A stretch of DNA of 64,000 nt, taken from positions 186,001 through 250,000 of IMG/VR virus record IMGVR_UViG_3300048438_000153; one strand, given 5' to 3'. Of this stretch, positions 2,438 to 58,451 are shown piece by piece (position 1 is the stretch's first letter; each line of letters begins with the position of its first letter). The notes below the pieces were generated by a model. It was not told where the DNA came from. It searched no databases and saw only the letters and a program-made list of their open reading frames with translations. A program made the position numbers and the translations under genes.

Positions 2438-5400
2438 AGAAGAAACTCCTTGGAGGTCACTACTTAAGCAACCCCTTATAAAAGGTTTATTAGAAGAGAA
2501 TTTGCGCGCTATTTTCTGAGCCGAGAAAGATTTCATGCGCGAGGTCATTCTCCTAGATAGATAATGCGACCCAAAAGACTTCTGCGAGGCTAATCTGAAG
2601 CTCCTACTGCTGTAGTTCGTGTTGATTTCTTCCTCGATCTTCTCAAGCAGACCAATAAGCTGATCTTGATCCCTACGCGGAGAGTCTAGAAGCTCCATGA
2701 TCTTCCGCGCCCTATACTTATTAGGATCGCCCGCGAACGCCGAGTCTTCATTGTAGCCCTCAATGTACTCACTAAGATTAAGAGATCTTAAGTTGGCTTC
2801 TCGCATAGACGCAAAGAGAGATGCGATCATATCCTCGTCTTTTTCGAGGAGCGCCTTCGCAAGAGCTTTCTTGTTCGACTTTAACCACCCCTTGAACTTG
2901 GTTTCTTTCCTATCTTCTTTCTTGTCTTTAGAAAGACCCCCTCTTCCCCCATAGCCCTTTTCGTCTTCTGACACGATAGAGTACATATCCATAGAAACCG
3001 TAGTCACATAGTCCCTCAGAATATTCCTCATTTCAGGTGGCATGGGCATGGGGCAATCTGCGACAGGGACTTTCTGACCCGCCGAATCACCGTTCATTGG
3101 GATGTCAGGGCAATACTGAGGGTCTAACAGCTCTGTAATCTCGCCGAAAGGACCACTGTCTCCACCTACGGCGCGCACAAAGTCTTCATCCGAAAGAGAC
3201 TCCATGAACTGCCTCTTGTGTGACCTTACCTCTTCAGGGGAAAGGCCGTTGTTTTCCCTCGAAAGATCAGAAACAACCATCATCGCATCTTGGCTGTTCA
3301 TCTGCTTGGCGTATTCTAAGAAAAAAGGGTCTACTTTAGAGCGTCCTTGAGGAATCTCCGCGTCGCCCTCCATGAGCATGGAGACATACGCCCCCTCTAG
3401 AGCCGACTCATACTTGAGCCTCCGCGCTTTCCTCTGATTCTTAGAAAGAGACTTATCTGTGTCGAGCTCAGACAACTTCTGTGAATAGAAGCTGAAAGCA
3501 TCTTGTCTGCGCTGAGCGTCTGAACCCTCTTCACCTCTTAGTCTGTCTACGGTGAAAGAAAGATTCTCTCCATATAAGCCCTCGTTCTCAGAATATTGTA
3601 TCTTCGCATAGCTGTCTCTTGACACATTGATGAACTGAGAGTTGGGAGGCATCCCATAATCGAAGTCGTTGAGAAAGTTAGCCTCCATCACAGCAGCCGC
3701 CATCGCCTGACCGAGCTCCCCACCCTTCATGTCAGAAAGAGGTCTGTTAAAGAGATCCTCTACGTCTTTCTTAAGGTCTTGGAGAACCTCTTGAGTGGAC
3801 TTATCAGAGGTGAAAGTATTAGTGAGACGATCAGCAGAGGCTTTGTACCCCTCCTCGAAATCTTCGAGGTCTTCTTCAGGCAAGCCCCCTAAGAGGTCGA
3901 TGAGATCTGAAAGCTTCCCCATAGACTTACTGCCTTTCAGAGCACTGTCTCTAGGGAGAGTGTCTCTGAGCTTAGAGGTGAACTCCTCTCTAGTCTCTTG
4001 AGCTTCTTTCTGATCCTCCTCAGACTGTTCTTCTGAAGCTGAATCTCTATTCGCCTTGTACAGCTCATGAAAGAACTTGAGGTTGTCGTCTTTATCTATC
4101 GCTTTGCGCCCTCGGTCAGACTTGCCAAGAAGGAAGTTAATCGCGTCCCCTTTCTTAGTCTCCTCAAGCTCTTTCTCTGACGAGATCCCCTCAACATCAT
4201 CTGTGAGGTCAGGAAACATCTTATCTAGGTCGAGCCCATCAACAAAGCCGATCAACTCACCCATTCTCTTAGAGAGAACATCTCTCGTCTCCTCTGTCGC
4301 CTCTTTGTCTCTCTGTGCTTGGATCTCACTGAGTTTTCCCTCAAGCTCTGCTTTCAGATCATCATCAGCTACCTCTATCTGTGACTTGACGTCCTGTATT
4401 TGGTAGTCAAGTTCAGGAATCTCAATCTTAGAGACAGAAGAAAGACCCGCGAGATCTCCCGCCTTGAAGTCTTTATCGAGAGTCATCTCCGCGAGAACTT
4501 GAAGGAAACGCTCTCGATCAATCTCTTTGCTTCCTTTCTGAAGAAGAGAAATGAAGTTACGTGGGTCATCTTCAAATTGTCTCTTTAGACCTATCCTGAC
4601 CGCCTTGAGCCGACGCTGTTCTGCTTTCTGCGCCTTCTGTTTCTTAGCAGACTCGGATTTGTGGTGGTTATCCACCCTTTTGCGTACTTCAGAGTGAGCG
4701 GAAGCGTACTCCCTCGAATCGGGGTCTGCGTTATAGGCTGTGTAGAAAGTGACCTTATTCCCCGCCTCTGAATCAAAGCGTGGGTTCTTATCTTTCTTAA
4801 GCTTGTCTACAATACTATCCTTTATGGGATCTTTTTTTTTTTGCTTCTCTTGAGCCATCCTCAGAGCGAACCTCAGCGCAACTCTCTTAGCCACTCTTTT
4901 GTGGTTCATCGAGAGGTCACGATCTCCCCCCGCACCCCCACCTAAGTTTTCTAGGTCAGGGTCATCAAATTTAACTCTCTTTCGAGAGAGGTCTTTGCGA
5001 GTGGGTTTTTTCTTAGGCTTAGGCTTTACGAGCCTTTCTACCTCGCGCTCTTCTTTCTCAAAGCTAGAAAGAGTGGCTAGTCTCATGTGTTTGCAGACAT
5101 CAGGCGCTCTTAAGCTCGCCATCTTTCTTACATCGAAGCACAGAGGAGTGTATTCTTTCCTCATGACCCTCAGCTCTTGGCTGACCTCACCGCAAGTGGG
5201 GTGGTATTTCTTAGTGTCTTTCGAGTCGATCCACCGAGCCTGTAGATCGCGCATAATCTGAGCTTTTCCCTCTAGGTAGTCCTCATACTCGAACTTCTTA
5301 TCTAGTGAGGTAGCCTCTTCATAGAGAGCCTCTATAGTAAGAAAGTGCTTTCTAATACAGTCAGGGCATCTCTTTCGAGGGCTGTTGAGATGATCCTCTA

Positions 5401-5497
5401 AGAGCGCAGACTGCTTACAAATTTCTCTGAGATTGAAGAGAGGGTTCATCACAGGGAGGATGCCCATCTTCTCTTCTTTCTTATTTGCGTATCTCAT
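2096..5497 (-). CDS. Large putative head/internal virion protein (about 1133 aa)
   Basis: Long ORF between portal and protease. Start moved to ATG 5497 (MRYANKK) behind an AAAGAGGT RBS. N-terminal CPDCIRKH motif; charged and helical. Confidence 0.55.
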   Translation of the reverse strand: MRYANKKEEKMGILPVMNPLFNLREICKQSALLEDHLNSPRKRCPDCIRKHFLTIEALYEEATSLDKKFEYEDYLEGKAQIMRDLQARWIDSKDTKKYHPTCGEVSQELRVMRKEYTPLCFDVRKMASLRAPDVCKHMRLATLSSFEKEEREVERLVKPKPKKKPTRKDLSRKRVKFDDPDLENLGGGAGGDRDLSMNHKRVAKRVALRFALRMAQEKQKKKDPIKDSIVDKLKKDKNPRFDSEAGNKVTFYTAYNADPDSREYASAHSEVRKRVDNHHKSESAKKQKAQKAEQRRLKAVRIGLKRQFEDDPRNFISLLQKGSKEIDRERFLQVLAEMTLDKDFKAGDLAGLSSVSKIEIPELDYQIQDVKSQIEVADDDLKAELEGKLSEIQAQRDKEATEETRDVLSKRMGELIGFVDGLDLDKMFPDLTDDVEGISSEKELEETKKGDAINFLLGKSDRGRKAIDKDDNLKFFHELYKANRDSASEEQSEEDQKEAQETREEFTSKLRDTLPRDSALKGSKSMGKLSDLIDLLGGLPEEDLEDFEEGYKASADRLTNTFTSDKSTQEVLQDLKKDVEDLFNRPLSDMKGGELGQAMAAAVMEANFLNDFDYGMPPNSQFINVSRDSYAKIQYSENEGLYGENLSFTVDRLRGEEGSDAQRRQDAFSFYSQKLSELDTDKSLSKNQRKARRLKYESALEGAYVSMLMEGDAEIPQGRSKVDPFFLEYAKQMNSQDAMMVVSDLSRENNGLSPEEVRSHKRQFMESLSDEDFVRAVGGDSGPFGEITELLDPQYCPDIPMNGDSAGQKVPVADCPMPMPPEMRNILRDYVTTVSMDMYSIVSEDEKGYGGRGGLSKDKKEDRKETKFKGWLKSNKKALAKALLEKDEDMIASLFASMREANLRSLNLSEYIEGYNEDSAFAGDPNKYRARKIMELLDSPRRDQDQLIGLLEKIEEEINTNYSSRSFRLASQKSFGSHYLSRRMTSRMKSFSAQKIARKFSSNKPFIRGCLSSDLQGVSSMQRLATSYVDYQQRARRFEIGMRVYPYFLGKPDKSGVVVQIFPAIGMVDVQFPHGVSRYPVEDLVLDTSGDYQNLANTPDSIPGGRGVVPVSSGPSSKKVASRYLRERKDRRG
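2477..2492 (-). promoter_or_regulatory. Late-promoter-like motif TAATA-AACCT-TTTATA, internal to a CDS
   Basis: Matches the motif found upstream of about 14 other genes. Confidence 0.55.
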
Positions 5498-5504
5498 ACT
5501 AACT

Positions 5505-5553
5505 ACCTCTTTATCTGTGGGCTTTACTTTACTCACAGATAAAGAGGTTATCA
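5505..5553 (-). promoter_or_regulatory. Late-promoter-like motif (5538-5553) with 15 bp RBS-sequestering hairpin
   Basis: TGATA-ACCTC-TTTATC. Perfect inverted repeat 5505-5519 / 5534-5548 covering AAAGAGGT before ATG 5497. Confidence 0.75.
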
Positions 5554-14590: not shown

Positions 14591-15271
14591 TCACCTCGCT
14601 AAGTATCTGTCAGCGACCCTACGCGCTGAGAAAGAATGGGTTGTACTAGCAGTCTTTGATCTAGGCTCAGCGAAGCTTCTTTCGGTCGGGCCTGTGTTAT
14701 CCTTGTCCTTCTTTTTCTTCTTCGCCTTCTCCACCATCTTCTTAGACTGAACTTTGCTAACTAAGCCTGTCATGTCTTCCTGTTGCTCAGCCCACTCTTC
14801 GGGATCTTCCTTGATACCCTCGATCTCTCTGAGAACGTCCTCAACTAGCTTAGTCTGAGCATCTAACCAATGATCCGCATTGATCTCATCATAGATCGTG
14901 TCAGAAATGGCTGATAGGGCTTCTACTATATTCATGAACTGACGGCGCATCGCCTTGATTTCCATGATGTAGCCTCGACCCCCGAGCGCGCCATCGGGGG
15001 AGATGTCCCTACTCTTAATCTTAGCAAAGACTGCGTAAGCTGTCATCGCGTGACCTAGCGACATGAGAGTGGACTTGAGGACGCAAGCGATCTGCTTACT
15101 GCATTTCTTGTTCAATCTATGAGACGGGTCCATCTTTCTTTCTGAAGGCGCGTGTTGATTCCAAGCCCATGCGTTAGAATCGTCACCGTGATCCTTGATG
15201 AACCTAACTTCACCCGCTGTCTTAATACGACCTTCGGGCTTAATCTGTTTCTTATGGAGATCCTGAGACAT
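14591..15271 (-). CDS. Putative virion protein
   Basis: 226 aa. Late motif and hairpin upstream; ends ARRVADRYLAR. Confidence 0.6.
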   Translation of the reverse strand: MSQDLHKKQIKPEGRIKTAGEVRFIKDHGDDSNAWAWNQHAPSERKMDPSHRLNKKCSKQIACVLKSTLMSLGHAMTAYAVFAKIKSRDISPDGALGGRGYIMEIKAMRRQFMNIVEALSAISDTIYDEINADHWLDAQTKLVEDVLREIEGIKEDPEEWAEQQEDMTGLVSKVQSKKMVEKAKKKKKDKDNTGPTERSFAEPRSKTASTTHSFSARRVADRYLAR

Positions 15272-15275: not shown

Positions 15276-15335
15276 ATCCTCTTTATAGTAGGGGCTGAGC
15301 GTTTTAACTCTGCCTCAACTATAAAGAGGATATTA
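15276..15335 (-). promoter_or_regulatory. Late-promoter-like motif (15320-15335) with 14 bp RBS-sequestering hairpin
   Basis: TAATA-TCCTC-TTTATA. Perfect inverted repeat 15276-15289 / 15318-15331 covering AAAGAGGA. Confidence 0.75.
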
Positions 15336-16569: not shown

Positions 16570-16768
16570 GCCTACCTTCTTTCTCAGGCTATTGTTAGAA
16601 CAGCTTTAATATAAAGAACCTAGTGACCCACCCAAATCGGTCGCCCAAAACCGAGCATCTCAACAAAATCTGAGAAATAGTTATCTGCCTGAGTGCTCCT
16701 AATAGGAAAGTAAGTCTTTAGTGGATTTATCCGCACCTAGAGGTATCTACGGAAAGGAACACTCAGGT

Positions 16769-18352: not shown

Positions 18353-18391
18353 ATAACAACCTTTCTTTGATGATTTCTTTAAAGGATATTA

Positions 18392-18631
18392 TCAAAGATC
18401 TAAAACAGCCACTCTCGGATATTCAGCGCCGTCTAAAGCGATCTGACGAGCGATGAGGTATTCAGCGTATACATTGTTCAGATAAAGGATACGCTCGGTT
18501 GTATACTCCCACTCACCATGCTCCTCTTCATACCGAGCATAGAAGTCTATGATCCTCTCATAGACCTCAATCTGAATGTTAATCTCATGGAGATTACTTT
18601 TATTGACTTTCTGCCTGAGTAAGTCGTCCAT
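18392..18631 (-). CDS. Hypothetical protein (79 aa)
   Basis: GGAGG RBS; follows thyX. Confidence 0.6.
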   Translation of the reverse strand: MDDLLRQKVNKSNLHEINIQIEVYERIIDFYARYEEEHGEWEYTTERILYLNNVYAEYLIARQIALDGAEYPRVAVLDL

Positions 18632-20293: not shown

Positions 20294-20352
20294 GTACTCT
20301 CTCCATAGACGTAGGGGGTTCTGACTAGTTAATGATAAGAATAGAAAGACTA

Positions 20353-20865
20353 TTAAGCCTCATCTTCATCCTCGAAGTCGATTTCTATTTTTTCGGGCTT
20401 ATCTGTCTTCTTAATGGGGTCTATCCAATCCTGAACTACGCCTTTTAACTGCACCTGATCTTCCGTCTTTGTCTTAATGACGGACTGCCCACTAAAGACA
20501 GAGAGCTTCTCAATCACGGCTGACTGAAGCTCGAATATCTGCTCTCTGAGGAGTTGCATCTGTATCTGAGCATCTCTTAACCGAGCGATCAGCGCAGCTC
20601 TGTCTCCGTTTGCTGAGGCGAGCTTATCTTTCAGCTCTTCGACCTCACTAGGATCGCGCCCCGAAGCTATCGCGAGCATACTAGAAATAGAGCCTGTCAG
20701 CATCCCGATGATGCCGATAAGAATATCTCTATTCTTCTCCACTATTTCGTGGGTAGATAGAAAGTAGATAAGAACGCAGATCAGGAACATGAAGACTACG
20801 CTCGCCCACCACCCTCTCTTCGCTTTCTCACTCTGAGTGAACTGTTTATGTGAACCTTCTGACAT
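20353..20865 (-). CDS. Two-TM membrane protein with C-terminal coiled coil
   Basis: Hydrophobic segments WWASVVFMFLICVLIYFL and ILIGIIGMLTGSISSMLAIA, then heptad-rich EVEELKDKL...LREQIFELQ. Confidence 0.75.
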   Translation of the reverse strand: MSEGSHKQFTQSEKAKRGWWASVVFMFLICVLIYFLSTHEIVEKNRDILIGIIGMLTGSISSMLAIASGRDPSEVEELKDKLASANGDRAALIARLRDAQIQMQLLREQIFELQSAVIEKLSVFSGQSVIKTKTEDQVQLKGVVQDWIDPIKKTDKPEKIEIDFEDEDEA

Positions 20866-22077: not shown

Positions 22078-22620
22078 TTAGACCTTAAGAGGATCGCCAT
22101 TAGGGTCAAAAAGACGCTCAATCTCAAACTCTCCGCCCTCACCTACTTTCACAGACCAAAGGTCTTTTGTAGACTTGTGTACGAGCTCGCCTGTAGCATT
22201 CGCATTTGAAGCGCCAAAGGCGGTTAAGAGAGACGGACCTGAGAGGATGATGAAGTCATCTAGACTAGCCACCCTCATCGAAGCTACTCTGAGAAAGTTG
22301 ACGCTCACACGGTCAATCTTATCCCCCCTACCATCCCACTGAACGAACACCTCTCCGTCCATAGACGTGACCTCACCCGAAGCAGTGCGAACCTTAACAA
22401 CAGATCCCTTTCTACCCGCCATAGGAAGCCTATTTGGGATTAAGAGTCCATTGTTGGTAGTAGAGACTACTCTAACGCCCTCAGTGAACTTAGCGAGCCT
22501 CTTAGACGTGACTGTTCGGTTAACGTCAACTAAGTCTGAGACTTTGGTGTTAATCACCTCGTCCATGCTTGCGGTCTTTTGAGCACTCGCAAACATATCA
22601 TTGAGCCATGAATCACTCAT
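22078..22620 (-). CDS. Putative virion protein (SH3-like beta domains)
   Basis: 180 aa with KTAS/RTAS/RVAS motifs. Late motif and RBS hairpin at 22619-22676. Confidence 0.6.
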   Translation of the reverse strand: MSDSWLNDMFASAQKTASMDEVINTKVSDLVDVNRTVTSKRLAKFTEGVRVVSTTNNGLLIPNRLPMAGRKGSVVKVRTASGEVTSMDGEVFVQWDGRGDKIDRVSVNFLRVASMRVASLDDFIILSGPSLLTAFGASNANATGELVHKSTKDLWSVKVGEGGEFEIERLFDPNGDPLKV

Positions 22621-22672
22621 AATACCCCTCTTTCTTTTCTGTGTACCTAAGAAAGAAGGATTATAAACAATT

Positions 22673-22720
22673 AAGCGAACCTAGAAAGGTTCTTGAGTTA
22701 GAAGCTAACTAGATTCGCTT
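22673..22720 (-). terminator. Long hairpin downstream of ssb (terminator or processing site)
   Basis: AAGCGAATCTAG...CTAGGTTCGCTT, 12 bp stem with one G-U pair, followed by AATTGTTT. Confidence 0.45.
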
Positions 22721-27983: not shown

Positions 27984-28043
27984 TGTGATCACTCCCTAAG
28001 TGTTATTTCTTCAACTACCTGAGAGAGCGAGATAAAGACTCTA

Positions 28044-29021
28044 TTAAGAAACCCCTATGACCGACCAATCAAAGTCCCCAACCATCCCATTCGCCGAATA
28101 ATCTGTGACAGTACCCTCAAAGAAATTCTTCATGGAGTCTCCTGAGATGATCCAATCGAGCCAAGAAAGAGGGTTTTCTTTCTGCTTAAAGATCGGCTTC
28201 AAACCAAGCTGAAGCAGTCTACGATCTGCCAAGTACCTGACGTATGTCTTAATGTCCTGAGAGGTCAGCTCATTAATCGTGTCGTTTGATCCGTAGACGA
28301 GATCGACAAGCGCGTCCTCAAGCCCTACCGCTTTCGTGTAGTTCGTGTAGATGTAACTCTTGAGCTCATCTGTCACTACTTGAGGGTTCTCAGTGCAGTA
28401 TGTGTGAAAGAGCTTAGTCATACCCTCAACGTGTGTCGTCTCGTCACGGATAGACCATTCAACTACCTCACACATACCCTTCATCTTTCCGAATCTCTGA
28501 AAGTTGAGGAGCATCACGAAAGCAGAAAAGAGACTCATGCCCTCGTTACACACCGAGCGCGCCATCTCGAACGCCATGTGAGCTTCATCTGAAAGACCTT
28601 TTGGAGCTTCCATCATGAACTCGATCTTCTCTCTCATAGCATCAAACTCTAAGAAAGCTGAGTATTCTTTCTCTGCAAACCCGAGAGTGTCATTCAAGAG
28701 CGCATACGCCCTTTGATGAGTACCCTCGCGGTTGGCGAAAGAAAGAAGCATATTCCTCACTTCGTTATTCTTGAAGAAAGGAATAAAGACCTCACAGTAG
28801 TTACCACCAACTGCGACATCACTTTGAGTGAAGATTCTCAAAATCTGAGTAATGTGTTCTTTCTCAGACTTTGAGATTTCACTGCCCTTCCACTGAGAGA
28901 CATCCTCTTGGAGCTTGGCTTCCCAAGTACCCCAATGGATCTTCTCATGGTCTTCCGCAAAGGTCATCGCCCATGCGTACTGAAAGGGCTTATAAGTCTT
29001 ACTGAACTCTGTAAGAGACAT
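28044..29021 (-). CDS. nrdB: Class Ia ribonucleotide reductase beta subunit
   Basis: FTQSD, REGTHQRAY (radical Tyr), NEGMSLFSAF, RDETTH, NFFEGTVTDY. Confidence 0.96.
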   Translation of the reverse strand: MSLTEFSKTYKPFQYAWAMTFAEDHEKIHWGTWEAKLQEDVSQWKGSEISKSEKEHITQILRIFTQSDVAVGGNYCEVFIPFFKNNEVRNMLLSFANREGTHQRAYALLNDTLGFAEKEYSAFLEFDAMREKIEFMMEAPKGLSDEAHMAFEMARSVCNEGMSLFSAFVMLLNFQRFGKMKGMCEVVEWSIRDETTHVEGMTKLFHTYCTENPQVVTDELKSYIYTNYTKAVGLEDALVDLVYGSNDTINELTSQDIKTYVRYLADRRLLQLGLKPIFKQKENPLSWLDWIISGDSMKNFFEGTVTDYSANGMVGDFDWSVIGVS

Positions 29022-29106
29022 ATTTTATGTCCTCCTGTGTTGAAAGGGATAGCATAGTACCCTCTCGGAGAACATAAAAGAGCTAGTACCTGTTAAAGTA
29101 CCGATC

Positions 29107-29945: not shown

Positions 29946-30004
29946 TCTCCTTACCATAGGTGTATCGAGAAGTTGGTTTACTGCCTACGATAAAGAGATT
30001 AAGA
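29946..30004 (-). promoter_or_regulatory. Late-promoter-like motif (29989-30004) with 15 bp RBS-sequestering hairpin containing three G-U pairs
   Basis: UCUCUUUAUCGUAGG (29984-29998) pairs with CCUAUGGUAAGGAGA (29946-29960). Confidence 0.75.
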
Positions 30005-30009
30005 AACTA

Positions 30010-31734
30010 TCAGCCCTGACAACTCATACACTCATCTATTTGAAAGTCTTTGAGTGCCTTTCGCTCTACCTTTTCAGAGACTTTCTCTCCTGTAACACCC
30101 GCATTTGTCCTCAAATAATAAAGACCCTTGAGCTTCTTCTTATAAGCTGAGAGATGAACCGCGTTGACATAGTTCGCGTCGCTACCCGAAGGGAAAAAGA
30201 GGTTCACACTCTGCCCCTGACAGACCCACTCTTGCCTGACGCCCGCGTGTTCCACTACCCACATCTGATCAAGTTCAAACGCCGTCTTGAACACCTCTTT
30301 CTCAAGATCAGAAAAGTAGTCTAGATGCTGTACGCTCCCCTGATTCAGAATCACGTCAGAAATCTGCTCGTCTACCCAACTATCAGACTCGCCCTTCTCT
30401 TCTTTCTTCTTCTGAATTAGGTTCAGTAGATGTTCGTTCACCTGTAAGAAAGAACCTGCGCGCGTTCTGTAGGTGAAGGCATTAGACTTCCAAGGCTCAA
30501 TGCTAGGAGACGTATTCAGAATGATCGCCGAGTTCGCATTCGGAGCAATCGCGAGGAGATGGCTGTTTCTTACTCCGCTACCCTCACCGTCCAAGTACTC
30601 CCCTCTCTTCTCTGCGAGGGATCTCGTGGCGCTCAGAGCTTTCTCTTTGATGGTAGAGTAGATCTTCCTATTAGCAGACACCGCGAAGACCGACTCGAAA
30701 GGAACTCCTTTACTCTGAAGATACGAGTGAAAGCCCATCGTCCCTAAGCCGAGCGATCTCTCTTTCTTGGCGGAGCTGATGGCTCTAGAAAGAGACTCAG
30801 GCGCGTTCTCTATGAAATACTCTAAGACATCATCAAGGAACTCAATCAAGTCCTCTACAATCGTGGTTTCTTTCCAAGCGTCGAAGTGCTCCACATTAAG
30901 ACTAGAAAGACAACAAACCGCTGACCTGTTCTCTCCTGTTGGGAGATGAATTTCGTTACAAAGGTTAGATCCGTTAATCTTCAAGCCTTTCTCTTTGAGG
31001 GGCTCGGGGAGGTGGCGGTTAGCCTCGTCGATGAAGTTAAGATAAGGCTCACCTGTCTTGAAGCGCACCTTCAATATTCTCTGCCATAGGTCGCGAGCGT
31101 CGAAAGTGTCTCTCACTGACCCATCTGAAGGATCAAGCAAGTCCCAAGAGTCACCCTTAAGAACTGCCTCCATAAAGTCATCTGTGATATTGAGCGCGTT
31201 GTTGAGGTTGAAGCACTTTCTGTTAGTGTCTCCACCTGTAGGAAGTCTCATGTTAAGAAACTCAATCACGTCAGGGTGAGAGATGTTGAGGTAGGCTGCG
31301 TAGCTTCCCTTTCTAGTTGACCCTTGTCGATACGCAACCATATCCGCGTCAACGGTCTTAAGAAAAGGGATAGGTCCAGGTGACTTGTCTGAGACTGAGC
31401 GCACACTCGACCAATGCCCTCCAACACCACCTCCCATCACGCTCATCATTCTGAGCTCTTCTGTATGAGAAATGAGTCCCTTAACTGAGTCAGGAACAAA
31501 AGTGAGGAAGCAACTGATCGGCATACCTTTCCCCCCCGCGTTGGAGAGGATCGGTGAGCTGAACATGAACCACCCTTTGCAAGCGTACTCATAGATTCTT
31601 TCTGCGAGCCCTTCATCTCTCGCGTAAAAATGCGAGGCTCTCTTAAAAGCCTCTTGTGGATTCTCCTCACCTTCTTTCATGTAGTATTTCTTCAGTAGGG
31701 ACTTGGCGTGTGTTGAAAACTCGAAACCTGTCAT
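30010..31734 (-). CDS. nrdA: Class Ia ribonucleotide reductase alpha subunit, no ATP cone
   Basis: ISCF, GGGVG, SNLCNEI, AVCCLSS, LAIAPNA, GLYYLR, C-terminal CMSCQG; only 574 aa. Confidence 0.96.
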   Translation of the reverse strand: MTGFEFSTHAKSLLKKYYMKEGEENPQEAFKRASHFYARDEGLAERIYEYACKGWFMFSSPILSNAGGKGMPISCFLTFVPDSVKGLISHTEELRMMSVMGGGVGGHWSSVRSVSDKSPGPIPFLKTVDADMVAYRQGSTRKGSYAAYLNISHPDVIEFLNMRLPTGGDTNRKCFNLNNALNITDDFMEAVLKGDSWDLLDPSDGSVRDTFDARDLWQRILKVRFKTGEPYLNFIDEANRHLPEPLKEKGLKINGSNLCNEIHLPTGENRSAVCCLSSLNVEHFDAWKETTIVEDLIEFLDDVLEYFIENAPESLSRAISSAKKERSLGLGTMGFHSYLQSKGVPFESVFAVSANRKIYSTIKEKALSATRSLAEKRGEYLDGEGSGVRNSHLLAIAPNANSAIILNTSPSIEPWKSNAFTYRTRAGSFLQVNEHLLNLIQKKKEEKGESDSWVDEQISDVILNQGSVQHLDYFSDLEKEVFKTAFELDQMWVVEHAGVRQEWVCQGQSVNLFFPSGSDANYVNAVHLSAYKKKLKGLYYLRTNAGVTGEKVSEKVERKALKDFQIDECMSCQG

Positions 31735-40521: not shown

Positions 40522-40604
40522 ATATGTACCCCTTGTGACAAGTGAGGTTATTTCTCTTAAACCAATAGAGCTGAGTAGATAAAACTACTATCGAGGAGAA
40601 AGAG

Positions 40605-46471: not shown

Positions 46472-46532
46472 TTCTTGTTCTCCTAGAAAGATGGGAGGGT
46501 TCTCTATTCTTACGTTTTATATAAACACTCTA

Positions 46533-49500
46533 CTAAACCACTAAGACCCCGTAGTCGTCAGCGCAGTAGAGTACCGTGTCAGCCACCGAGCCGAAATCAA
46601 TGTTAAAGTCACCCTCCCCGAAAGCGTCGGCTACCGAGCCGTAGTCGATGACTTCCATGACTCGACCATAGATTACGAGGTCGCCTCCAACGAGAGCGTT
46701 CGGGTTCAGAGAAATACTCTGAGACGTAATCACAGGACTCTCGTTAACGTCTGTACCTATAGTTGGAACAGTACCCGGCTCAAATCTACTGTTGTTGGCG
46801 TTGTAGACAAGACCCTGACCATCGGCCAAATCAGTCAAGTCAACATCGGAGTGCGTTTCAACTGAGCCCAAGACGGTAAGATTTGAGCCATCTAACGCCC
46901 CTAACTTACCTTCTCCATCTGTAACAACCGCCTTGCCGTTCTCACCACCTCCGCCATTAATAGTAGTGTCGAGTGTAGAAGCAGAGCCGAGTCCTAAGTT
47001 GCCTCTCGCTACCGCTTCATTTCCCCCATCAGAAATCTCAGAAAGACTGTTGCCGACCTGAAGCAAGTCTGAAATGTCTGTAGTCGCTGTTGAAGTAAGA
47101 CCGAGAGTAGACCTAGCTGTCGCGGAATCCGCGTCATCCAAAAGTGTTCTCGCAAAGGCTGTTACATCAGCCTCAGCCCAAGTATCTACTCCTGTAGTAT
47201 ATATGAGCTTATCAGCGCCCGTCCCGAGATCAGAAATAGCACTCAAGGTGGCGTCAAAAGCTTGGACGTCAGTGTCGATCTCTAACCCAAGAGTAGTTCG
47301 AGCCGTCGCTGAGTCAGCGTCATCTAAGAGTGTCCTAGAGAAAGCAGAAAGGGTGGCTTCAGCCCAAGTATCTACTCCCGTAGTATATATGAGCTTGTTA
47401 GCGCCTGTCCCGAGATCAGAAATACTCTGAAGAGTAGCATCGTAGGCTTGGACGTCAGTGTCGATCTCTAACCCAAGAGTAGTTCGAGCCGTCGCTGAGT
47501 TAGCGTCATCTAAGAGAGATCTAGCGAACGCCGTAAAGATGGTGATTGAGAAAGTATCTACGCCACTTGCATAAATGAGTCTATCAGCGCCCGTATTAAC
47601 ACCAGCTAAAGCTTGTAATGTAGCATCATAAGCCTGAACATCAGAGCCGATCTCAACACCTAAGTTACCCCTCGCATTCGCGACGTTATCTAAGTCATTA
47701 AGATTATTAGCTGACTGAAGAAGATTGCCAATGTCTGTTGTGGCTGTCGAAGTGAGGCCGAGGGTAGTTCTCGCTGTGTTAGCATCAGCATCGTCTAAGA
47801 GTGTTCTAGAGAAAGCAGAAAGGGTGGCCTCAGCCCAAGTGTCTACTCCCGTAGTGTAAGCGAGCTTATCAGCCCCCGTTCCGAGCGCGGAGAGAGAAGC
47901 TAACGTCGCATCGTAGGCTTGAATATCAGTGTCGATCTCTAACCCAAGAGTAGTTCGAGCGGTCGCTGAGTTAGCATCGTCTAAGAGTGTCCTAGAGAAA
48001 GCAGAAAGGGTGGCTTCAGCCCAAGTGTCTACTCCCGTAGTATATATGAGCTTATCAGCTCCCGTCCCGAGATCAGAAATAGCACTCAAGGTGGCGTCAA
48101 AAGCTTGAACGTCAGACCCGATAGCGACACCGAGATTAGCCCTCGCATTCGCGACGTTATCTAAGTCATTAAGATTGTTAGCTGACAGAAGAAGATCAGC
48201 GAGGTCTGTTGTCGCAGTAGGGGTAAGACCGAGGGTCGCTCTAGCATCTGCTGAGTTAGCGTCATCTAAGATTGTTCTAGCGAAAGCAGAAAGAGTTGCT
48301 TCAGCCCAAGTATCCAATCCCGTAGTATATATGAGCTTATCAGCTCCCGTTCCGAGATCAGAAATAGCACTCAAGGTGCTGTCGAGAGGCTGATAAGTGT
48401 TTGCGAGATCCAAGTCTGTGATCTCTGCTTGAACATAAGCAGTAGTGGCGACGAGAGTTGAATCATCACCGAGATCAGGGCTTTCCACTCTTAATGGAGA
48501 AAGAGTCAGGTTGGCGTCATTAAACTCTGTGGCGGTGTGGGCATCAGTGGTCGTGCCTAGCTTGAACGTGTCTGTGCTCTCGTCAAAAAAGAACACCGCG
48601 TCATTTCCCGTAGTCCCACGCTCGAAGAAAAGACCGATGTCATTGGGGTTAGCTCCGCCATCAACGCCTTTATTAAGTCTGACAATCGTATCTTCTACAT
48701 CTAGTGTAGAAGTGTTGACTGTTGTCGTGTCGCCCTGAACTTGAAGATCACCACTTACGATAACCTTCGACCCAACACCTCCGAGCGTTAAGACTGAAGG
48801 GTTGCCATTATTGGTAGTCATCGTCGCGCCGATTGTTGCATCTGCGTTGGTGAAGTCGATTCCTGTCATGCCACTAAGAGTTGTGGAAGCCCCTCCCAAA
48901 GAAATGGATGTTGAACCTACAGTCAAAGAGCTGTTCGCGAGCTTATCGTTCGTGACGTCTCCATCAACAATCTTAGCAGTCGTAACAGAGTCGGCATCGA
49001 GCTTCGCCTCAGTGACGTTCCCATCTACGATTTTAGCCGTAGTAACGGAGTCAGCGTCGAGCTTCGCTTCAGTGATGTTGCCGTTCAAAATCTTAGCGGT
49101 GGTTACAGCATCGTTACTTATGGTAGCCAAGCCCTCGTTGGAGATAGAAACATCACCCGAGAGAGATACGTTCTTCCATTGATTGTCGTCCGCACCCCCA
49201 TCGGAGTCGTAGACGATAATCTGAGCGTCTGCGACGTCGGCGAGGAGGACATCGTTGAGGTCATCGAGGCTAGAGACGTTGCCTGCTGCTTGCATGACGT
49301 CATTGACCCACTCAGTAGTCGCTACTGTAGTGTCATCAGAGGCGAGGTCAGGAGTTGCTGAAGTAAGAGTACCCACCTCAAAGTTATATGCGAAAGCCCC
49401 GAAAGTAGTAGCTCTTGTGGTGAGCGCGATGCTTGCGTTGTCTGAGAGGTTAGACGTAGAAATCGTCTGATTCGCAAAACCACCATTTCCTGTACTCACT

Positions 49501-52040: not shown

Positions 52041-52089
52041 CTTTATATGTCTCTCTTCTTTCTCCAAGAGACATATAAAGACTTAATCA
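52041..52089 (-). promoter_or_regulatory. Late-promoter-like motif (52074-52089) with 14 bp RBS-sequestering hairpin
   Basis: Perfect inverted repeat 52041-52054 / 52067-52080 pairing the AAAG of the RBS for the fibre gene. Confidence 0.75.
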
Positions 52090-52877: not shown

Positions 52878-52944
52878 AGTGTTAGATAAATAAACTATCC
52901 CTAAGAAGAAAGAGGTCTTTGATCATAGGGAATGAGAGCGACGC

Positions 52945-53359: not shown

Positions 53360-53608
53360 TCAGCACTCCTCTACAAAGTAACCTTTGCTCTTGAGATAAG
53401 CCATTAAAGAGACAATCTTATAGGGGTCATTTGACGTGACTACGAGCTTGTTCTCTTTGAGCGAACACTCCCACTCCTCTTTCTCTTTAAGGGTTCTAAG
53501 AAACCTCTCAGAGAACTCTCCATACTGAGGGTGGACGGTCACAGAGTATTCTTTCTTAATAATTCTCTCTAACCACTTATCTGCTACTTTCTTGCTGATA
53601 ATGCTCAC
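53360..53608 (-). CDS. Hypothetical protein (about 82 aa)
   Basis: Start moved to GTG 53608 (GTGA overlap with the upstream stop); begins MSIISKKVADKWL. Confidence 0.55.
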   Translation of the reverse strand: MSIISKKVADKWLERIIKKEYSVTVHPQYGEFSERFLRTLKEKEEWECSLKENKLVVTSNDPYKIVSLMAYLKSKGYFVEEC

Positions 53609-54174
53609 AGAAGAACTCGCCTTACTTCCTGACCCCCCCCTGTCTTTCTTAGGAGGGTGAGGTTTGAGTTGACTGTGCTTAGAGCTAGGTGGATCTCTTT
53701 CAAGTCCTCGATCTTTTCTAGTGCGCTGAGACATCTTAGAAACCTATACCTTACTTTCCCTTGAGACTCTCCGATTTCCCTAGCCGCATGGCTTTGACTA
53801 GAGTAGAGATAAAGAAGTATCATTACTCTTATATCCTTCTTATCAGAAAAGTACCGAGAAAGATTATCTTGTAAGTATGCTTCTGTGAAGACAGGTATCG
53901 TGAGCAATACTCTGAGTCTATCCATAGCCCGATTCACACGATAGTGTATGTTCGGCTGAGTGTACCCGAATATCTTACCGAGAGATGATTGAGGCACACC
54001 TTTCAAGACGTGAAGCTCGATCATATCAGCCTCCACAGGGCTAATCCGACCCATGTGGTCGAGGACACACTCAAGCCTCTCTAAAGTCTCCTCGCTTGAT
54101 TCTTCTGAGTACGTTGGGAAGTTCGACATTGAGTGCTCATTAGAGAAGATTCTCTCCATGATGTGGCTATCCAT
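53605..54174 (-). CDS. Sigma70 region-4-like protein with two tandem HTH domains
   Basis: ISPVEADMIELHVLKGVPQSSLGKIFGYTQPNIHYRVNRAMDRLR and DKKDIRVMILLY...SQSHAAREIGESQGKVRYRFLRCL. Confidence 0.7.
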   Translation of the reverse strand: MDSHIMERIFSNEHSMSNFPTYSEESSEETLERLECVLDHMGRISPVEADMIELHVLKGVPQSSLGKIFGYTQPNIHYRVNRAMDRLRVLLTIPVFTEAYLQDNLSRYFSDKKDIRVMILLYLYSSQSHAAREIGESQGKVRYRFLRCLSALEKIEDLKEIHLALSTVNSNLTLLRKTGGGQEVRRVLL

Positions 54175-54703
54175 TAGAATCTCCTACTGAGAAAGAATCC
54201 ACTGTGAGAATCACTTCCGCGCTCCTCAGAGTGATCAATATCGAGTACCGTCCACCCTCAAACTCGCTTTCTTTTTCCAAGATATCGAGGACAATCCCTA
54301 CGCACCCTTTAAAGTCACCCCCCGTGATTTCAACCTCATCCCCCAATCGGTAGTTCCCACCACGACTGTAAGCCTCAGAGATCATCTTTCTTAAGTCGGA
54401 CTCGCTTATCGTTCCTTGAGATATCATGTCGCTTCGGGTGTCGTATTGACTGATCATGCTGTCTATGTAAACAGACCTCGCTAAGTCATAATACTTAGCT
54501 GAGGGATAGCCAGACTTGACGAAGATATACCCTTCTATAAGAAAGGTCGCTTTTGAAGAACCTCCTCTTAAGATCGGTATGTAGATGTCTTCAAGGCTTA
54601 CCTCAGCTAAGTCTTTCAGCCGTTGCGCTAAAAGTCCTAGCTTAGCTTCTTCCTCCCCCTTCGGCGATGTTTGCATCACCACCCAAGTCGATCTCTTTCT
54701 CAT
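54167..54703 (-). CDS. nusG: NusG/RfaH-family transcription elongation factor
   Basis: NGN domain (WVVMQT...GEE...IYIP...LIEGYIFVK) and KOW domain (GDEVEITGGDFKGCVGIV). Confidence 0.85.
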   Translation of the reverse strand: MRKRSTWVVMQTSPKGEEEAKLGLLAQRLKDLAEVSLEDIYIPILRGGSSKATFLIEGYIFVKSGYPSAKYYDLARSVYIDSMISQYDTRSDMISQGTISESDLRKMISEAYSRGGNYRLGDEVEITGGDFKGCVGIVLDILEKESEFEGGRYSILITLRSAEVILTVDSFSVGDSNG

Positions 54704-56976: not shown

Positions 56977-57024
56977 AACCGTTCTCCTTTAGCTCTTCAG
57001 AAAGAGCTGACTATAAACGAGGTA

Positions 57025-57507
57025 CTACTCTTCAAGTCTCTTTCTATGTCTCTTGACAGCGCGGTAACAGTTAGACCTGTCAGTAAAGCCCGCTATTTTG
57101 GCGATCTTTTCATAAGACCAGCCATTTTTCTTTCTTAACTTGTAAGCGAACTCCGCTCTCTTGTCTATGAAAGGGTTAGGTAGGCTCTTGTCCTCACAAT
57201 ATCTTCTGATTCGATAGTAAACCTTGTCTTTGTGAAGCCCTACAAGCTGAGAAATATCCCGAACGCTCATGCCGTTCATAAAAAGCGCATGAAGGTAGTC
57301 TCCGTTGTATTTTCTAGTAGGCAAAGGATAGGGTGCGCTCGTCTTTCTCGCGTACTTGACGACCTGATACCTCACTCTTTCTTTCTTAATGCCCAAAGCA
57401 TACGCGATCTCTCGGTATGTCATGCCCTGAGAATAGAGGCTGTAAGCCTCGAAAGAAAGGGTGTCTAGTCCTCCCAAATCTGACTCCACCAACAGGCACA
57501 ATCCCAC
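57025..57507 (-). CDS. Protein with three tandem HTH motifs
   Basis: GMTYREIAYALG, GMSVRDISQLVG, GWSYEKIAKIAG. Confidence 0.75.
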   Translation of the reverse strand: MGLCLLVESDLGGLDTLSFEAYSLYSQGMTYREIAYALGIKKERVRYQVVKYARKTSAPYPLPTRKYNGDYLHALFMNGMSVRDISQLVGLHKDKVYYRIRRYCEDKSLPNPFIDKRAEFAYKLRKKNGWSYEKIAKIAGFTDRSNCYRAVKRHRKRLEE

Positions 57508-58415
57508 TTGTTAGCGGTGATATGGTGATGTCCTACAACGCCTGTAAAAGAACTCGTCATGTAACTCTTATCCATGACTCCATGATAGAAATCTCCCTCG
57601 TAGGACTGACCGTCCACACCGCGAGGACACTGATAAGGGATGTCGAGCACGTCGCAGAGAGACTTAATCGCCTCACGAACTGCGAGCGCGACTCTTGGGT
57701 CAAGCGTCAAGACCTTCTTGTCTCCGCGCCCTGTTGTGTTCTCTTCCACTGAAAGATTGTAGCCTTTTTTAGTGTAGTGGTCTTTCCACTTCAGGCTAGG
57801 TTGCTGACAGATGTCGATCCCTACTGAATAAGAGTTTGACCAACCTCCATGCCACGACTTGTGGTTGAGGTCGAGATACTGATAAATCGTAGGATCTCCG
57901 CTAGGGCTAAGTCCGATACCCGCATGACTAGAAACCTTTCTGTCAGGGTTTGAGAATATCCTATGACAGTGTGTGGGGTCGAGCCCTCCCCAATGCACGA
58001 CGATGAACGTAGGCTTTCTGCCGTTTCTAGAAGAGAAGTGACCAAAGCGGTGGAGATCAAGACCACCACTCTGATCGAAGTTGATAGTATGAACGTCTCC
58101 ATCAATCTCTACGTTGATGCGCCTGTCGTTCAGTGTCCAAAAGGGTTGGGTATCGTCAACGTGATCGAATTTCTTAAGGAGAACTGACCATGTTCCGCGC
58201 CCCATCTTACCATCTACTTGACTACCTGAGCCGTAGGTGTCTTCTTGGAAAGACTCAACCGCTAAAGCGAACTCTACTGAGTCATAAGGCGCGTCGAGAT
58301 TCGGATATGCTTCTATAGCACCACAGGGGATAGAACCGCCCCAACCGACACTTGAAGATGCTTTCAGATTGTAAGTGCAAGCACTCTTTTTCGTCTGTGT
58401 GATCAAACTTGACAT
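57465..58415 (-). CDS. Endolysin: N-acetylmuramoyl-L-alanine amidase (Amidase_2) with PG-binding N-terminus
   Basis: AVESFQ...VDGKMGRGTW PG-binding motif; IVVHWG, SSHAGI, WHGG..NSYSVGIDI, GHHH...KWDC. Confidence 0.85.
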   Translation of the reverse strand: MSSLITQTKKSACTYNLKASSSVGWGGSIPCGAIEAYPNLDAPYDSVEFALAVESFQEDTYGSGSQVDGKMGRGTWSVLLKKFDHVDDTQPFWTLNDRRINVEIDGDVHTINFDQSGGLDLHRFGHFSSRNGRKPTFIVVHWGGLDPTHCHRIFSNPDRKVSSHAGIGLSPSGDPTIYQYLDLNHKSWHGGWSNSYSVGIDICQQPSLKWKDHYTKKGYNLSVEENTTGRGDKKVLTLDPRVALAVREAIKSLCDVLDIPYQCPRGVDGQSYEGDFYHGVMDKSYMTSSFTGVVGHHHITANKWDCACWWSQIWED

Positions 58416-58417
58416 AA

Positions 58418-58451
58418 AATGACCTCTTTTCTTTCTTAAAGAAGGTTATTG
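58418..58451 (-). promoter_or_regulatory. Variant late motif (CAATA-N6-TTTAA) with hairpin covering the endolysin RBS
   Basis: AAUAACCUUCUUU pairs imperfectly with AAAGAGGUCAUU. Confidence 0.5.

What the first reader, a model, noticed from the sequence alone, without database searches (positions are those of the whole stretch)
2477..58451. Recurrent late-promoter motif built into RBS-sequestering hairpins: a systematic promoter-dependent translation switch
Seen: a minus-strand motif NRRTA-N5-TTTAT(A/C), with some variation in the first element, lies upstream of structural or lysis-type genes at 2477-2492, 5538-5553, 15320-15335, 16610-16625, 20340-20355, 22662-22676 (N4), 28031-28046, 29989-30004, 40578-40593, 46520-46535, 52074-52089, 52885-52900 and 57012-57027. 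TTTAA/N6 variants occur at 18378-18394 and 58436-58451. At many sites the motif forms or adjoins the 5' arm of a hairpin whose 3' arm is the Shine-Dalgarno of the next gene: 5505-5519/5534-5548 (15 bp perfect), 15276-15289/15318-15331 (14 bp perfect), 52041-52054/52067-52080 (14 bp perfect), 29946-29960/29984-29998 (15 bp, 3 G-U), 22619-22636/22649-22664, 18353-18364/18381-18392, 27989-27997/28022-28030 and 58418-58429/58438-58450. The arms differ in sequence between sites, and the G-U pairs form only on the sense mRNA. Known: T4 uses this logic for a few genes (e, soc, I-TevI), where read-through early mRNA hides the RBS and late mRNA starting inside the hairpin frees it. Inference: this phage uses it as a general timer for late genes scattered among early genes.
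Basis: partly seen in the sequence, partly recalled or inferred. Interest (0 to 1): 0.88.

Follow-up and report, generated by a model that had tools for sequence, protein, structure and literature searches.

The report
Promoter-linked RBS-hiding hairpins, huge phage
An uncultivated 275-kb phage and its relatives share a short promoter-like DNA motif that, at about half its sites, also forms the first arm of an RNA hairpin hiding the next gene's ribosome-binding site, the trick known from a few phage T4 genes, here used widely but not yet shown by experiment.

Summary
All eight hairpin arm pairs check out base for base. The exact pattern RRTA-N5-TTTATM occurs 8 times, all on the minus strand, against 0.7 expected. 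A weight matrix built only from relatives finds 16 minus-strand and 1 plus-strand hits in the window.

In 91 non-redundant motif sites from related huge-phage contigs, the Shine-Dalgarno is unpaired with probability 0.25 in long leaders, against 0.42 in controls. It opens once the 5' end lies about +7 past the hexamer, the usual -10-to-start distance. Arms match their own site only, and G-U pairs favour the sense RNA.

The best reading is a phage-specific promoter whose own transcripts lack the anti-RBS arm, as for T4 e, soc and I-TevI. The claim of a general late-gene timer goes too far:
- Only about 6 of 16 window sites, and about half family-wide, behave as a switch.
- The motif also precedes nrdB, a ParB-like gene and an SNF2-like gene.
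- The two TTTAA variants are weak.
- No transcription start site is known.

This is a new member of a known kind, of moderate interest.

The parts
5534..5553 (-). Motif TGATAACCTCTTTATC (5538-5553) overlapping the 5' arm (5534-5548) of the hairpin upstream of the 1133-aa gene that follows the portal gene.
   Evidence: Exact pattern hit. PWM 15.7 bits. 15/15 WC pairs. Fold z -8.4.
5505..5519 (-). 3' arm holding the SD (AAAGAGG) of the gene that starts at 5497.
   Evidence: SD unpaired 0.01 in the long leader, 0.41 with the 5' end at +7.
15318..15335 (-). Motif TAATATCCTCTTTATA (15320-15335) plus the 5' arm (15318-15331). It is the first promoter-like site of the operon 226 aa - 866 aa - 223 aa - 224 aa - TerL - p78 - portal.
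   Evidence: 16.4 bits; 14/14 WC; z -7.3.
15276..15289 (-). 3' arm holding the SD of gene 14591-15271.
   Evidence: SD unpaired 0.00 to 0.52.
52067..52089 (-). Motif TGATTAAGTCTTTATA (52074-52089) plus the 5' arm (52067-52080), upstream of the 1832-aa tail-fibre gene.
   Evidence: PWM 11.4 bits. 14/14 WC. z -5.5.
52041..52054 (-). 3' arm adjoining and overlapping the SD (AAGGAG) of the tail-fibre gene (start 52031).
   Evidence: SD unpaired 0.12 to 0.75.
29984..30013 (-). Two overlapping motif registers (29988-30005 and 29996-30013) plus the 5' arm (29984-29998), between nrdA and the ParB/Srx-like gene.
   Evidence: PWM 12.9 and 14.7 bits. 12 WC + 3 GU. z -3.5. The leader is kept in L048/L134 with changes in the 3' arm.
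29946..29960 (-). 3' arm holding the SD (TAAGGAG) of gene 29107-29940.
   Evidence: SD unpaired 0.00 to 0.47.
22619..22676 (-). N4-spaced motif variant (22662-22676) and hairpin arms 22649-22664 / 22619-22636, upstream of the 180-aa gene.
   Evidence: 12 WC + 2 GU + 2 mismatches. z -2.6. SD 0.00 to 0.58. The orthologue in L134 has a canonical TTTATA and an 11/12 stem.
27989..28046 (-). Motif TAATAGAGTCTTTATC (28031-28046; its TAA is the nrdB stop codon) and arms 28022-28030 / 27989-27997, upstream of the 372-aa gene.
   Evidence: PWM 16.8 bits. 7 WC + 2 GU. z -1.5. The SD stays closed at +7 (0.00 to 0.09).
29027..29089 (-). A 9-bp stem pairs the hexamer end plus TTCTCC with GGAGGACAT (arm coordinates approximate).
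   Evidence: PWM 12.8 bits. Duplex z -3.0. Orthologues in L127/L134 keep the motif and a 12-bp stem in another register. Not relieved at +7 (0.17 to 0.23).
2477..2492 (-). Motif inside the 1133-aa ORF, 39 nt upstream of an in-frame ATG (2437) with SD AAGGAG. No RBS hairpin.
   Evidence: Motif, SD and ATG are conserved in 7 of 7 relatives (PWM 13-17.8 bits).
16610..16625 (-). Motif variant (CACTAG...TTTATA) in a divergent intergenic region, upstream of the 397-aa gene. No hairpin.
   Evidence: PWM 11.1 bits. z +0.4.
20340..20355 (-). Motif variant (TCTATT hexamer) upstream of the 284-aa gene. No significant hairpin.
   Evidence: PWM 13.7 bits. z 0.0.
40578..40593 (-). Motif in an 83-nt divergent gap upstream of the SNF2-like 1737-aa gene. 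No motif-linked hairpin.
   Evidence: (11.4 bits).
46520..46535 (-). Motif upstream of the 1804-aa tail protein. RBS open in both leader forms.
   Evidence: (15.7 bits).
52885..52900 (-). Motif upstream of the 167-aa gene. No hairpin.
   Evidence: (16.6 bits).
57012..57027 (-). Motif upstream of the 325-aa gene. It has only a small hairpin that does not cover the SD.
   Evidence: (11.6 bits).
18353..18394 (-). TTTAA variant and weak stem upstream of the 90-aa gene. Doubtful member.
   Evidence: Below 8 bits on the minus strand. z -1.0.
58418..58451 (-). TTTAA variant and weak stem upstream of the amidase (endolysin-like) gene. Doubtful as a motif instance.
   Evidence: Amidase_2, E 5e-11. Fold z -0.4, yet SD unpaired 0.06 to 0.51. 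The orthologue in L141 has a canonical TTTATA.
53605..54703 (-). Candidate trans-acting factors: a protein with two sigma-region-4-like HTH domains (53605-54174) and a NusG/KOW-like protein (54167-54703), next to the clamp loader.
   Evidence: Borderline Pfam hits. Foldseek top hits are sigma region 4 of ECF sigma factors, with weak E-values. The cluster is conserved in 55 of 57 clamp-loader loci. The link to the motif is inferred only.

Best explanation
The 16-nt motif, consensus T-(A/T)-A-T-A-G-T-T-T-N-T-T-T-A-T-(A/C), is a phage-specific promoter. Its TTTAT(A/C) part acts as a -10-like hexamer, probably read by host RNA polymerase redirected by a phage factor.

At roughly half of its sites, the spacer, the hexamer and the first ~10 nt after it are complementary to the SD and start codon of the gene 26-57 nt downstream. 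RNAs that enter from upstream carry both arms and fold the RBS away. RNAs that start about 7 nt past the hexamer lack most of the 5' arm and are translated. Translation of these genes is therefore tied to their own promoter firing. This is the logic of T4 e, soc and I-TevI.

Shown here: the motif, the stems, their site-specific complementarity, their sense-strand bias, and the position of the predicted switch point.

Inferred: promoter function, the start site, the timing, and any effect on translation.
For: Motif.
- The exact pattern occurs 8 times against 0.70 expected, all on the coding strand.
- TTTATA is the top-enriched 6-mer in 458 upstream regions of relatives, with the window's contig excluded (60 against 7.9 expected).
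- The ATAG element lies upstream at a fixed spacing, and the motif ends 26-57 nt before the ATG.
- A relatives-only PWM finds 16 minus against 1 plus hit in the window.
- In relatives it scores >=10 bits in 104 of 843 leaders where GC <0.5, against 2 of 1006 where GC >=0.5.
- It occurs in divergent intergenic gaps (20 of 91 sites).
- It is conserved inside a coding region in 7 of 7 relatives.
- Sigma-70-consensus promoters are depleted (32 against about 55 expected), and none lies at a motif site.
- A gene for a sigma-region-4-like protein is conserved beside the clamp loader.

Hairpins.
- The three longest hairpin repeats in the window are all motif/SD stems.
- Fold z-scores reach -8.4.
- Motif region against its own RBS has a median duplex energy of -10.0 kcal/mol, against -7.2 for other sites' RBS (p 8.5e-10). 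Energies <=-16 occur in 20% against 0.6% (first set).
- The sense RNA is more stable than the antisense at 30 sites against 12 (p 1.3e-4). Of 84 G-U pairs, 70 have U in the 5' arm.
- Orthologous leaders keep the stem with different sequences and compensatory changes.

Switch point.
- SD-core unpaired probability is 0.25 in long leaders against 0.42 in controls (p 4.5e-8).
- It crosses the control at +5 to +7 and reaches 0.63 at +9.
- RBS partners pile up at -9 to +10 and are depleted beyond +13.

Precedent. The T4 mechanism is described in PMC3014915 and PMC2988022.
Against: - There is no TSS, timing or translation data. The phage is uncultivated, and the nearest cultured relatives (phage G, Tunturi_5) lack the motif.
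- RBS partners peak at +1 to +10. If transcription started right after the hexamer, the stem would largely persist (0.40 against 0.50 in controls).
- About half of the motif sites have no stem. In the window, 28031, nrdB and 40578 stay closed at +7.
- Stems also occur at divergent sites, where read-through is not expected (43% at E<=-10).
- The tail-fibre stem is not kept in L141/L142.
- The motif precedes nrdB, and a ParB-like and an SNF2-like gene, so a 'late' class is not established.
- When neighbouring genes carry the same motif, the hairpin cannot act as a timer between them.
Confidence: 0.55

Rival explanations
1. Translational coupling. The hairpin hides the RBS on polycistronic RNA until a ribosome finishing the upstream gene melts the 5' arm. 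Downstream translation is then tied to upstream translation, not to promoter choice.
For: In 34 of 71 co-directional sites, the upstream stop codon is the TAA or TAG of the motif's upstream element, exactly 13 or 10 nt before the hexamer end. In 49% of sites with a motif-proximal arm, the arm starts within 12 nt of the stop.
Against: 51% of arms start more than 12 nt after the stop, and some up to 168 nt after it. The strongest window stems are far from any stop: 15320 lies about 40 nt away and 52074 more than 250 nt away. 20 sites are divergent. Most RBS partners lie at +1 to +10, beyond the reach of a ribosome parked on a stop at -13 or -10. This rival does not explain why the arms are anchored to the hexamer.
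Confidence: 0.15
2. The motif is an RNA-level signal rather than a promoter. It could be an AU-rich endonuclease cleavage site, RNase E-like or phage-encoded. Cleavage inside the 5' arm would free the RBS.
For: The motif is AU-rich and sits in or next to the 5' arm. The same truncation curve would follow from cleavage near +5 to +9. No TSS data exclude it.
Against: The motif is strictly bipartite with fixed spacing and near-invariant T/A positions, which is typical of protein-DNA recognition. It occurs in short divergent gaps that must hold a promoter. Sigma-70-type promoters are otherwise missing. The phage encodes sigma-region-4-like and NusG-like factors.
Confidence: 0.12
3. The motif is a promoter, but its own transcripts contain the stem because transcription starts at or before about +1. 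The stem then acts as a 5'-terminal stabiliser, or as an operator that needs a trans-acting activator or helicase to open the RBS.
For: RBS partners peak at +1 to +10. Stems occur at divergent sites. Sites 28031 and nrdB stay closed at +7.
Against: Pairing to hexamer and spacer positions is enriched 1.7- to 2.4-fold over controls. Many of the strongest stems lie wholly upstream of +3 (5538, 15320, 29989, L013, L041). Such stems cannot exist in a transcript that starts after the hexamer.
Confidence: 0.1
4. Coincidence of composition. CT-rich promoter flanks pair with purine-rich SD sequences by chance and have no function.
For: Non-cognate motif/RBS pairs still reach -7 kcal/mol. About half of the sites lack a stem, and some orthologous stems are lost.
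Against: Cognate pairs are far stronger than non-cognate pairs (p about 1e-9). Perfect stems of 14-22 bp occur. The stem is kept with different sequences at orthologous sites.
Confidence: 0.05

Closest known systems
T4 late-promoter / RBS-sequestering hairpins (genes e, soc, 49, I-TevI, I-TevII, I-TevIII, segB; mobE of phage Aeh1)
   Same: The SD and/or AUG is paired in transcripts arriving from upstream. [quoted passage not shown] The genes sit inside longer co-directional transcription units (PMC3014915, PMC2988022).
   Different: - The promoter motif differs: T(A/T)ATAG-N4-TTTAT(A/C) instead of TATAAATA.
- The phage lineage is unrelated. It is a huge-phage clade only distantly related to Bacillus phage G (portal 27% identical).
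- The scale is far larger: about half of roughly 100 motif sites across the clade, against about ten T4 genes.
- It is not limited to late or lysis genes.
- Nothing has been tested by experiment.
Translational coupling through RBS-occluding stems (for example the RNA-phage MS2 coat/replicase pair and bacterial ribosomal-protein operons; from general knowledge)
   Same: The downstream RBS is hidden in a stem whose 5' arm lies near the end of the upstream cistron. In about half of the sites here, the upstream stop codon lies inside the motif.
   Different: The 5' arms here are anchored to a promoter-like hexamer rather than to the upstream coding sequence. Many are out of reach of a terminating ribosome, or lie in divergent gaps.
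Phage-encoded sigma factors with compact promoters (T4 gp55; SPO1 gp28 and gp33/34; from general knowledge)
   Same: The signal is short, AT-rich and dominated by a -10-like element. The phage encodes sigma-like proteins. A gene for a sigma-region-4-like protein lies next to the clamp loader, which recalls the clamp dependence of T4 late transcription.
   Different: The protein here has two sigma-region-4-like HTH domains and no detectable region 2. No link between it and the motif has been shown.

Membership tests
T4-type transcript-dependent RBS sequestration (e / soc / I-TevI type) | The SD and/or start codon is base-paired in the long (read-through) RNA. | tested here: met
   In silico only. 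Fold z reaches -8.4. SD unpaired 0.00-0.12 at six window sites. Family mean 0.25 against 0.42 in controls.
T4-type transcript-dependent RBS sequestration (e / soc / I-TevI type) | A promoter is placed so that its transcripts start inside or after the 5' arm. | tested here: inconclusive
   The promoter is inferred from a conserved motif only. The predicted switch point at +5 to +9 fits a -10-like hexamer. No TSS is known, and the partners peak at +1 to +10.
T4-type transcript-dependent RBS sequestration (e / soc / I-TevI type) | Transcripts from upstream promoters read through into the gene. | tested here: inconclusive
   71 of 91 sites have a co-directional upstream gene. No U-tract terminator precedes the main window sites. 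Stems are somewhat stronger in co-directional contexts (p 0.012), but the accessibility measure shows no difference.
T4-type transcript-dependent RBS sequestration (e / soc / I-TevI type) | Long and short leaders are translated differently. | not testable with these tools
   This needs reporter fusions or ribosome profiling.
T4 late promoter class (gp55-dependent) | TATAAATA at -10. | tested here: not met
   The consensus is TTTAT(A/C) with an upstream TATAG element. Only some low-GC relatives show TAAATA-like variants.
Sigma-70-type promoter | TTGACA - 16-18 nt - TATAAT. | tested here: not met
   No consensus match lies at any motif site. Such matches are depleted in the window.
Intrinsic (rho-independent) terminator | A GC-rich stem followed by a U-tract. 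| tested here: not met
   None of the motif/SD stems is reported by the terminator scan. The 3' arms are followed by spacer plus ATG, not by a T run.
Translational-coupling stem | The 5' arm lies within reach of a ribosome terminating on the upstream gene. | tested here: inconclusive
   49% of arms start <=12 nt after the stop and 51% start further away. 20 sites are divergent.
Any curated RNA family (Rfam 15) | A match at the gathering threshold. | tested here: not met
   0 matches in the window.

The most novel reading that the evidence does not exclude
A whole clade of uncultivated huge phages may use promoter-embedded anti-RBS arms as a general design rule. Each cistron's translation would be tied to its own phage-specific promoter and insulated from read-through RNA. 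G-U wobble would reconcile a T-rich promoter with a G-rich SD. The upstream stop codon is often built into the same 16 nt. The promoters may be read by the conserved sigma-region-4-like / NusG-like module that sits beside the clamp loader.
Probability: 0.3. Interest if true: 0.65.

Novelty: new member of a known kind. Interest (0 to 1): 0.5.

Why it matters
- It defines a previously undescribed promoter-like motif for a widespread group of 200-375-kb environmental phages. The motif can be used to annotate their transcription units.
- It suggests that transcript-origin-dependent translation, known from a handful of T4 genes, can be a common genome-wide strategy in an unrelated lineage.
- It gives sharp, cheap predictions: a TSS at about +7, closed-to-open behaviour at named sites, and compensatory mutations.
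- If confirmed, the motif/hairpin pairs would be compact parts for promoter-gated translation in synthetic circuits.

Tried and rejected
- Megablast of 4.9 kb against GenBank phages gave no match.
- Cultured distant relatives (Bacillus phage G, Tunturi_5) carry sigma-factor genes but not the motif or the stems. Tunturi_5 shows a different recurring GGGTATTA motif.
- Loci holding the ParB-like gene in other phage lineages do not share the leader design. Only close relatives do.
- The 397-aa gene downstream of site 16610 was considered as the major capsid protein. It has only six homologues and no family hit, so this was dropped.
- The 277-aa 'late' gene between nrdA and nrdB turned out to have a ParB/Srx-like fold and is not structural.
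- Within the window alone, stem z-scores of motif against non-motif leaders are not significantly different (p 0.083), because half of the motif sites have no stem.
- The test of co-directional against divergent contexts gave mixed results.
- A second (early) promoter motif in motif-less gaps was looked for by eye only, and none was found.
- Rfam and tRNA scans found nothing.
- Literature searches found no description of this motif or of a genome-wide use of the T4 logic.

Full report
**What the window is.** The window is part of IMGVR_UViG_3300048438_000153, a 275-kb uncultivated phage contig.
- Genes run almost entirely on the minus strand from 1 to 58415. A plus-strand block follows from 58465.
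- Recognisable head and tail genes:
  - a prohead-protease-like gene (675-2093)
  - portal (5567-7240)
  - a 1044-aa large terminase that contains an intein (7473-10607)
  - a 1804-aa tail protein
  - a 1832-aa tail fibre
- Recognisable nucleotide and DNA-metabolism genes:
  - PhoH
  - ThyA
  - a Dda/RecD-like helicase
  - NrdB and NrdA
  - an SNF2-like 1737-aa protein
  - a clamp loader
- Also recognisable are an Amidase_2 endolysin-like gene (57465-58415) and, on the plus strand, methyltransferases, dCMP deaminase and RuvC.
- The nearest database phages are an unannotated 485-kb metagenomic phage (portal 69% identical) and, far off, Tunturiibacter phage Tunturi_5 (36%) and Bacillus phage G (27%).

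**The motif is real.**
- The strict pattern RRTA-N5-TTTATM occurs 8 times, all on the minus strand, against 0.70 expected. No shuffle reaches 8. The hexamer alone is not enriched, so the signal is the bipartite element in context.
- Independent support comes from relatives. A portal search returned 42 loci in 27 dereplicated groups.
  - In 458 upstream regions of these relatives, with the window's own contig excluded, TTTATA is the most enriched 6-mer (60 against 7.9 expected). ATAGTT, TAGTTT and TAATAG follow.
  - Aligned on the hexamer, the consensus is T-(A/T)-A-T-A-G-T-T-T-N-T-T-T-A-T-(A/C). It ends 26-57 nt before the start codon.
- A PWM trained on relatives only finds 16 minus-strand and 1 plus-strand hits at >=10 bits in the window.
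  - It recovers 12 of the 13 reader sites.
  - It does not support the N4 site at 22662 in that register, nor the two TTTAA variants.
  - It adds a site upstream of nrdB (29072-29089) and a weaker one upstream of nrdA.
- In a larger set of 76 dereplicated loci (1.5 Mb), the motif is confined to relatives with GC below 0.5: 104 of 843 leaders, against 2 of 1006 in high-GC relatives.

**The hairpins are real, but not at every site.**
- Folding z-scores against dinucleotide shuffles:

| Site | z-score |
|---|---|
| 5538 | -8.4 |
| 15320 | -7.3 |
| 52074 | -5.5 |
| 29989 | -3.5 |
| 22662 | -2.6 |
| 28031 | -1.5 |
| 18378 | -1.0 |
| 58436 | -0.4 |

- The other seven sites have no RBS-occluding stem.
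- In the whole window, the only non-palindromic inverted repeats found (seed 10, arms within 60 nt) are three of these stems.
- Among 58 window leaders, the three most extreme RBS-to-upstream complementarities are all at motif sites.

**The link between motif and stem holds across the family.**
- Portal set: duplex energy between the motif region and its own RBS has a median of -10.1 kcal/mol, against -7.0 for non-cognate pairs (p 1.6e-7).
- Expanded set of 91 non-redundant sites: -10.0 against -7.2 (p 8.5e-10). Energies <=-16 occur in 20% of cognate and 0.6% of non-cognate pairs.
- The stems are more stable as sense RNA than as antisense (30 against 12 sites, p 1.3e-4). Of 84 G-U pairs, 70 put U in the T-rich 5' arm opposite an SD guanine (first set). 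This points to an RNA-level function on the mRNA strand.
- Downstream of the portal gene, and upstream of the small gene that precedes it, different lineages keep an RBS-occluding stem with quite different sequences. This includes double compensatory changes, among them at the variable last base of the hexamer.
- Conservation is not universal. The 14-bp tail-fibre stem is absent from the orthologous leaders of L141 and L142.

**Where the switch would be.**
- In MFE folds of long leaders, the partners of RBS nucleotides pile up at -9 to +10 relative to the last base of the hexamer. That is about three times the control density. They are depleted beyond +13.
- SD-core unpaired probability, by 5'-end position:

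| 5' end of the RNA | Motif sites | Controls |
|---|---|---|
| long leader (-45) | 0.25 | 0.42 (p 4.5e-8) |
| +1 | 0.40 | 0.50 |
| +7 | 0.57 | 0.51 |
| +9 | 0.63 | 0.52 |

- The predicted switch point is therefore where a -10-like hexamer would place the start site.
- Window sites, long leader against a 5' end at +7:

| Site | Long leader | 5' end at +7 |
|---|---|---|
| 5538 | 0.01 | 0.41 |
| 15320 | 0.00 | 0.52 |
| 22662 | 0.00 | 0.58 |
| 29989 | 0.00 | 0.47 |
| 52074 | 0.12 | 0.75 |
| 58436 | 0.06 | 0.51 |

- Sites 28031, nrdB and 40578 stay closed. The rest are open in both forms.

**Why a promoter is the best reading.**
- The motif is strand-specific, bipartite with fixed spacing, and at a fixed distance from starts.
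- It is present in short divergent gaps (20 of 91 sites).
- It is conserved at the nucleotide level inside a coding region in 7 of 7 relatives, 40 nt before a conserved in-frame start.
- Sigma-70-consensus promoters are depleted in the window, and none coincides with a site.
- The phage encodes a protein with two sigma-region-4-like HTH domains and a NusG/KOW-like protein next to the clamp loader. This cluster is conserved in 55 of 57 related loci.
- Phage G and Tunturi_5 also annotate sigma factors.
- None of this shows transcription initiation.

- The motif precedes two tail genes, the amidase and the head operon. Known DNA-metabolism genes such as PhoH, ThyA, Dda, the clamp loader and the plus-strand block lack it.
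- It also precedes nrdB, with a stem. It precedes a gene with a ParB/Srx-like fold that carries a DGHHRW motif, and an SNF2-like gene. 'Late' is therefore a hypothesis.
- Where adjacent genes (nrdA, the ParB-like gene, nrdB, the 372-aa gene) each carry the same motif, the stem cannot time one against another. It would instead tie each cistron to its own promoter.
- Stems also occur at divergent sites.

**Rivals.**
- Translational coupling is a live partial alternative. In 34 of 71 co-directional sites, the upstream stop codon is the TAA or TAG inside the motif (exactly 13 or 10 nt before the hexamer end). About half of the arms begin within 12 nt of it. The strongest stems and the divergent sites are out of a terminating ribosome's reach.
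- An RNA-cleavage signal would give the same truncation curve and cannot be excluded without primary 5' ends.
- A start site directly after the hexamer would leave many stems intact. Against this, pairing to hexamer and spacer bases is enriched, and several of the best stems lie wholly upstream of +3.
- Intrinsic terminators and known RNA families are excluded.

**Comparison with what is known.**
- The mechanism is that of T4 e, soc, 49, I-TevI/II/III, segB and Aeh1 mobE. There, a late promoter lies in the DNA that encodes the 5' strand of an RBS-sequestering helix (PMC3014915, PMC2988022).
- Here the promoter motif is different and the lineage is unrelated.
- The use is much broader. Nothing has been tested by experiment.
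- I found no description of this motif, or of such wide use, in the searchable literature.

**Verdict.** This is a new member of a known kind of control, with a newly defined promoter-like motif and a clear, testable prediction: starts at about +7.

Noticed in passing
window 7473-10607 (-): The 1044-aa large terminase carries an intein (LAGLIDADG_3 and Intein_splicing, residues about 147-536). Relatives' TerL matches start at residue 537, so many of them lack it.
   Followed up: partly
window 2096-2492 (-): An internal motif, an SD and an in-frame ATG at 2437 lie inside the 1133-aa ORF. They would give a nested 113-aa product just upstream of the prohead protease. Motif and small protein are conserved in 7 of 7 relatives.
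   Followed up: partly
window 53605-55952 (-); loci L141-L197: The gene order clamp loader, NusG/KOW-like, then a protein with two sigma-region-4-like HTH domains is conserved in 55 of 57 related loci, across GC 29-67%. It recalls the clamp-linked late transcription of T4. The function is untested.
   Followed up: partly
91 motif sites in relatives; window 28044-28046: The upstream gene's stop codon is very often the TAA or TAG of the motif's TAATAG element. The distance from the stop to the hexamer end is exactly 13 nt (20 sites) or 10 nt (14 sites) out of 71.
   Followed up: partly
window 29107-29940 (-): The 277-aa gene between nrdA and nrdB belongs to a large, well-conserved family with no Pfam domain and an invariant DGHHRW motif. 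Its predicted fold resembles ParB/Srx (pLDDT 93; Foldseek top hits ParB, E about 0.01).
   Followed up: yes
window 54790-54807 (+): The only strong plus-strand PWM hit (12.5 bits) lies antisense inside the clamp-loader gene. It is either a possible antisense promoter or a chance match.
   Followed up: no
window 41057-46471 (-): The 1804-aa tail protein starts with an Mtd_N domain (major tropism determinant N-terminal, E 7e-11) and contains many internal repeats. No search for a diversity-generating retroelement was made.
   Followed up: no
window about 31765-31810 (-): A GC-rich stem followed by a T run lies upstream of nrdA. It is a terminator-like element between gene 31850-32785 and nrdA.
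   Followed up: no
window 1-60000: Sigma-70-consensus promoter matches are about half as frequent as in shuffled sequence (9, 16 and 7 found, against about 18 expected per 20 kb).
   Followed up: no
L044 (Tunturiibacter phage Tunturi_5): A different recurring upstream motif, GGGTATTA, appears before several genes of this distant cultured relative.
   Followed up: no
window 33430-34291: A large non-coding region of about 860 nt lies around a divergent junction and contains AT-rich and repeated stretches. It could be an early-promoter or origin region.
   Followed up: no
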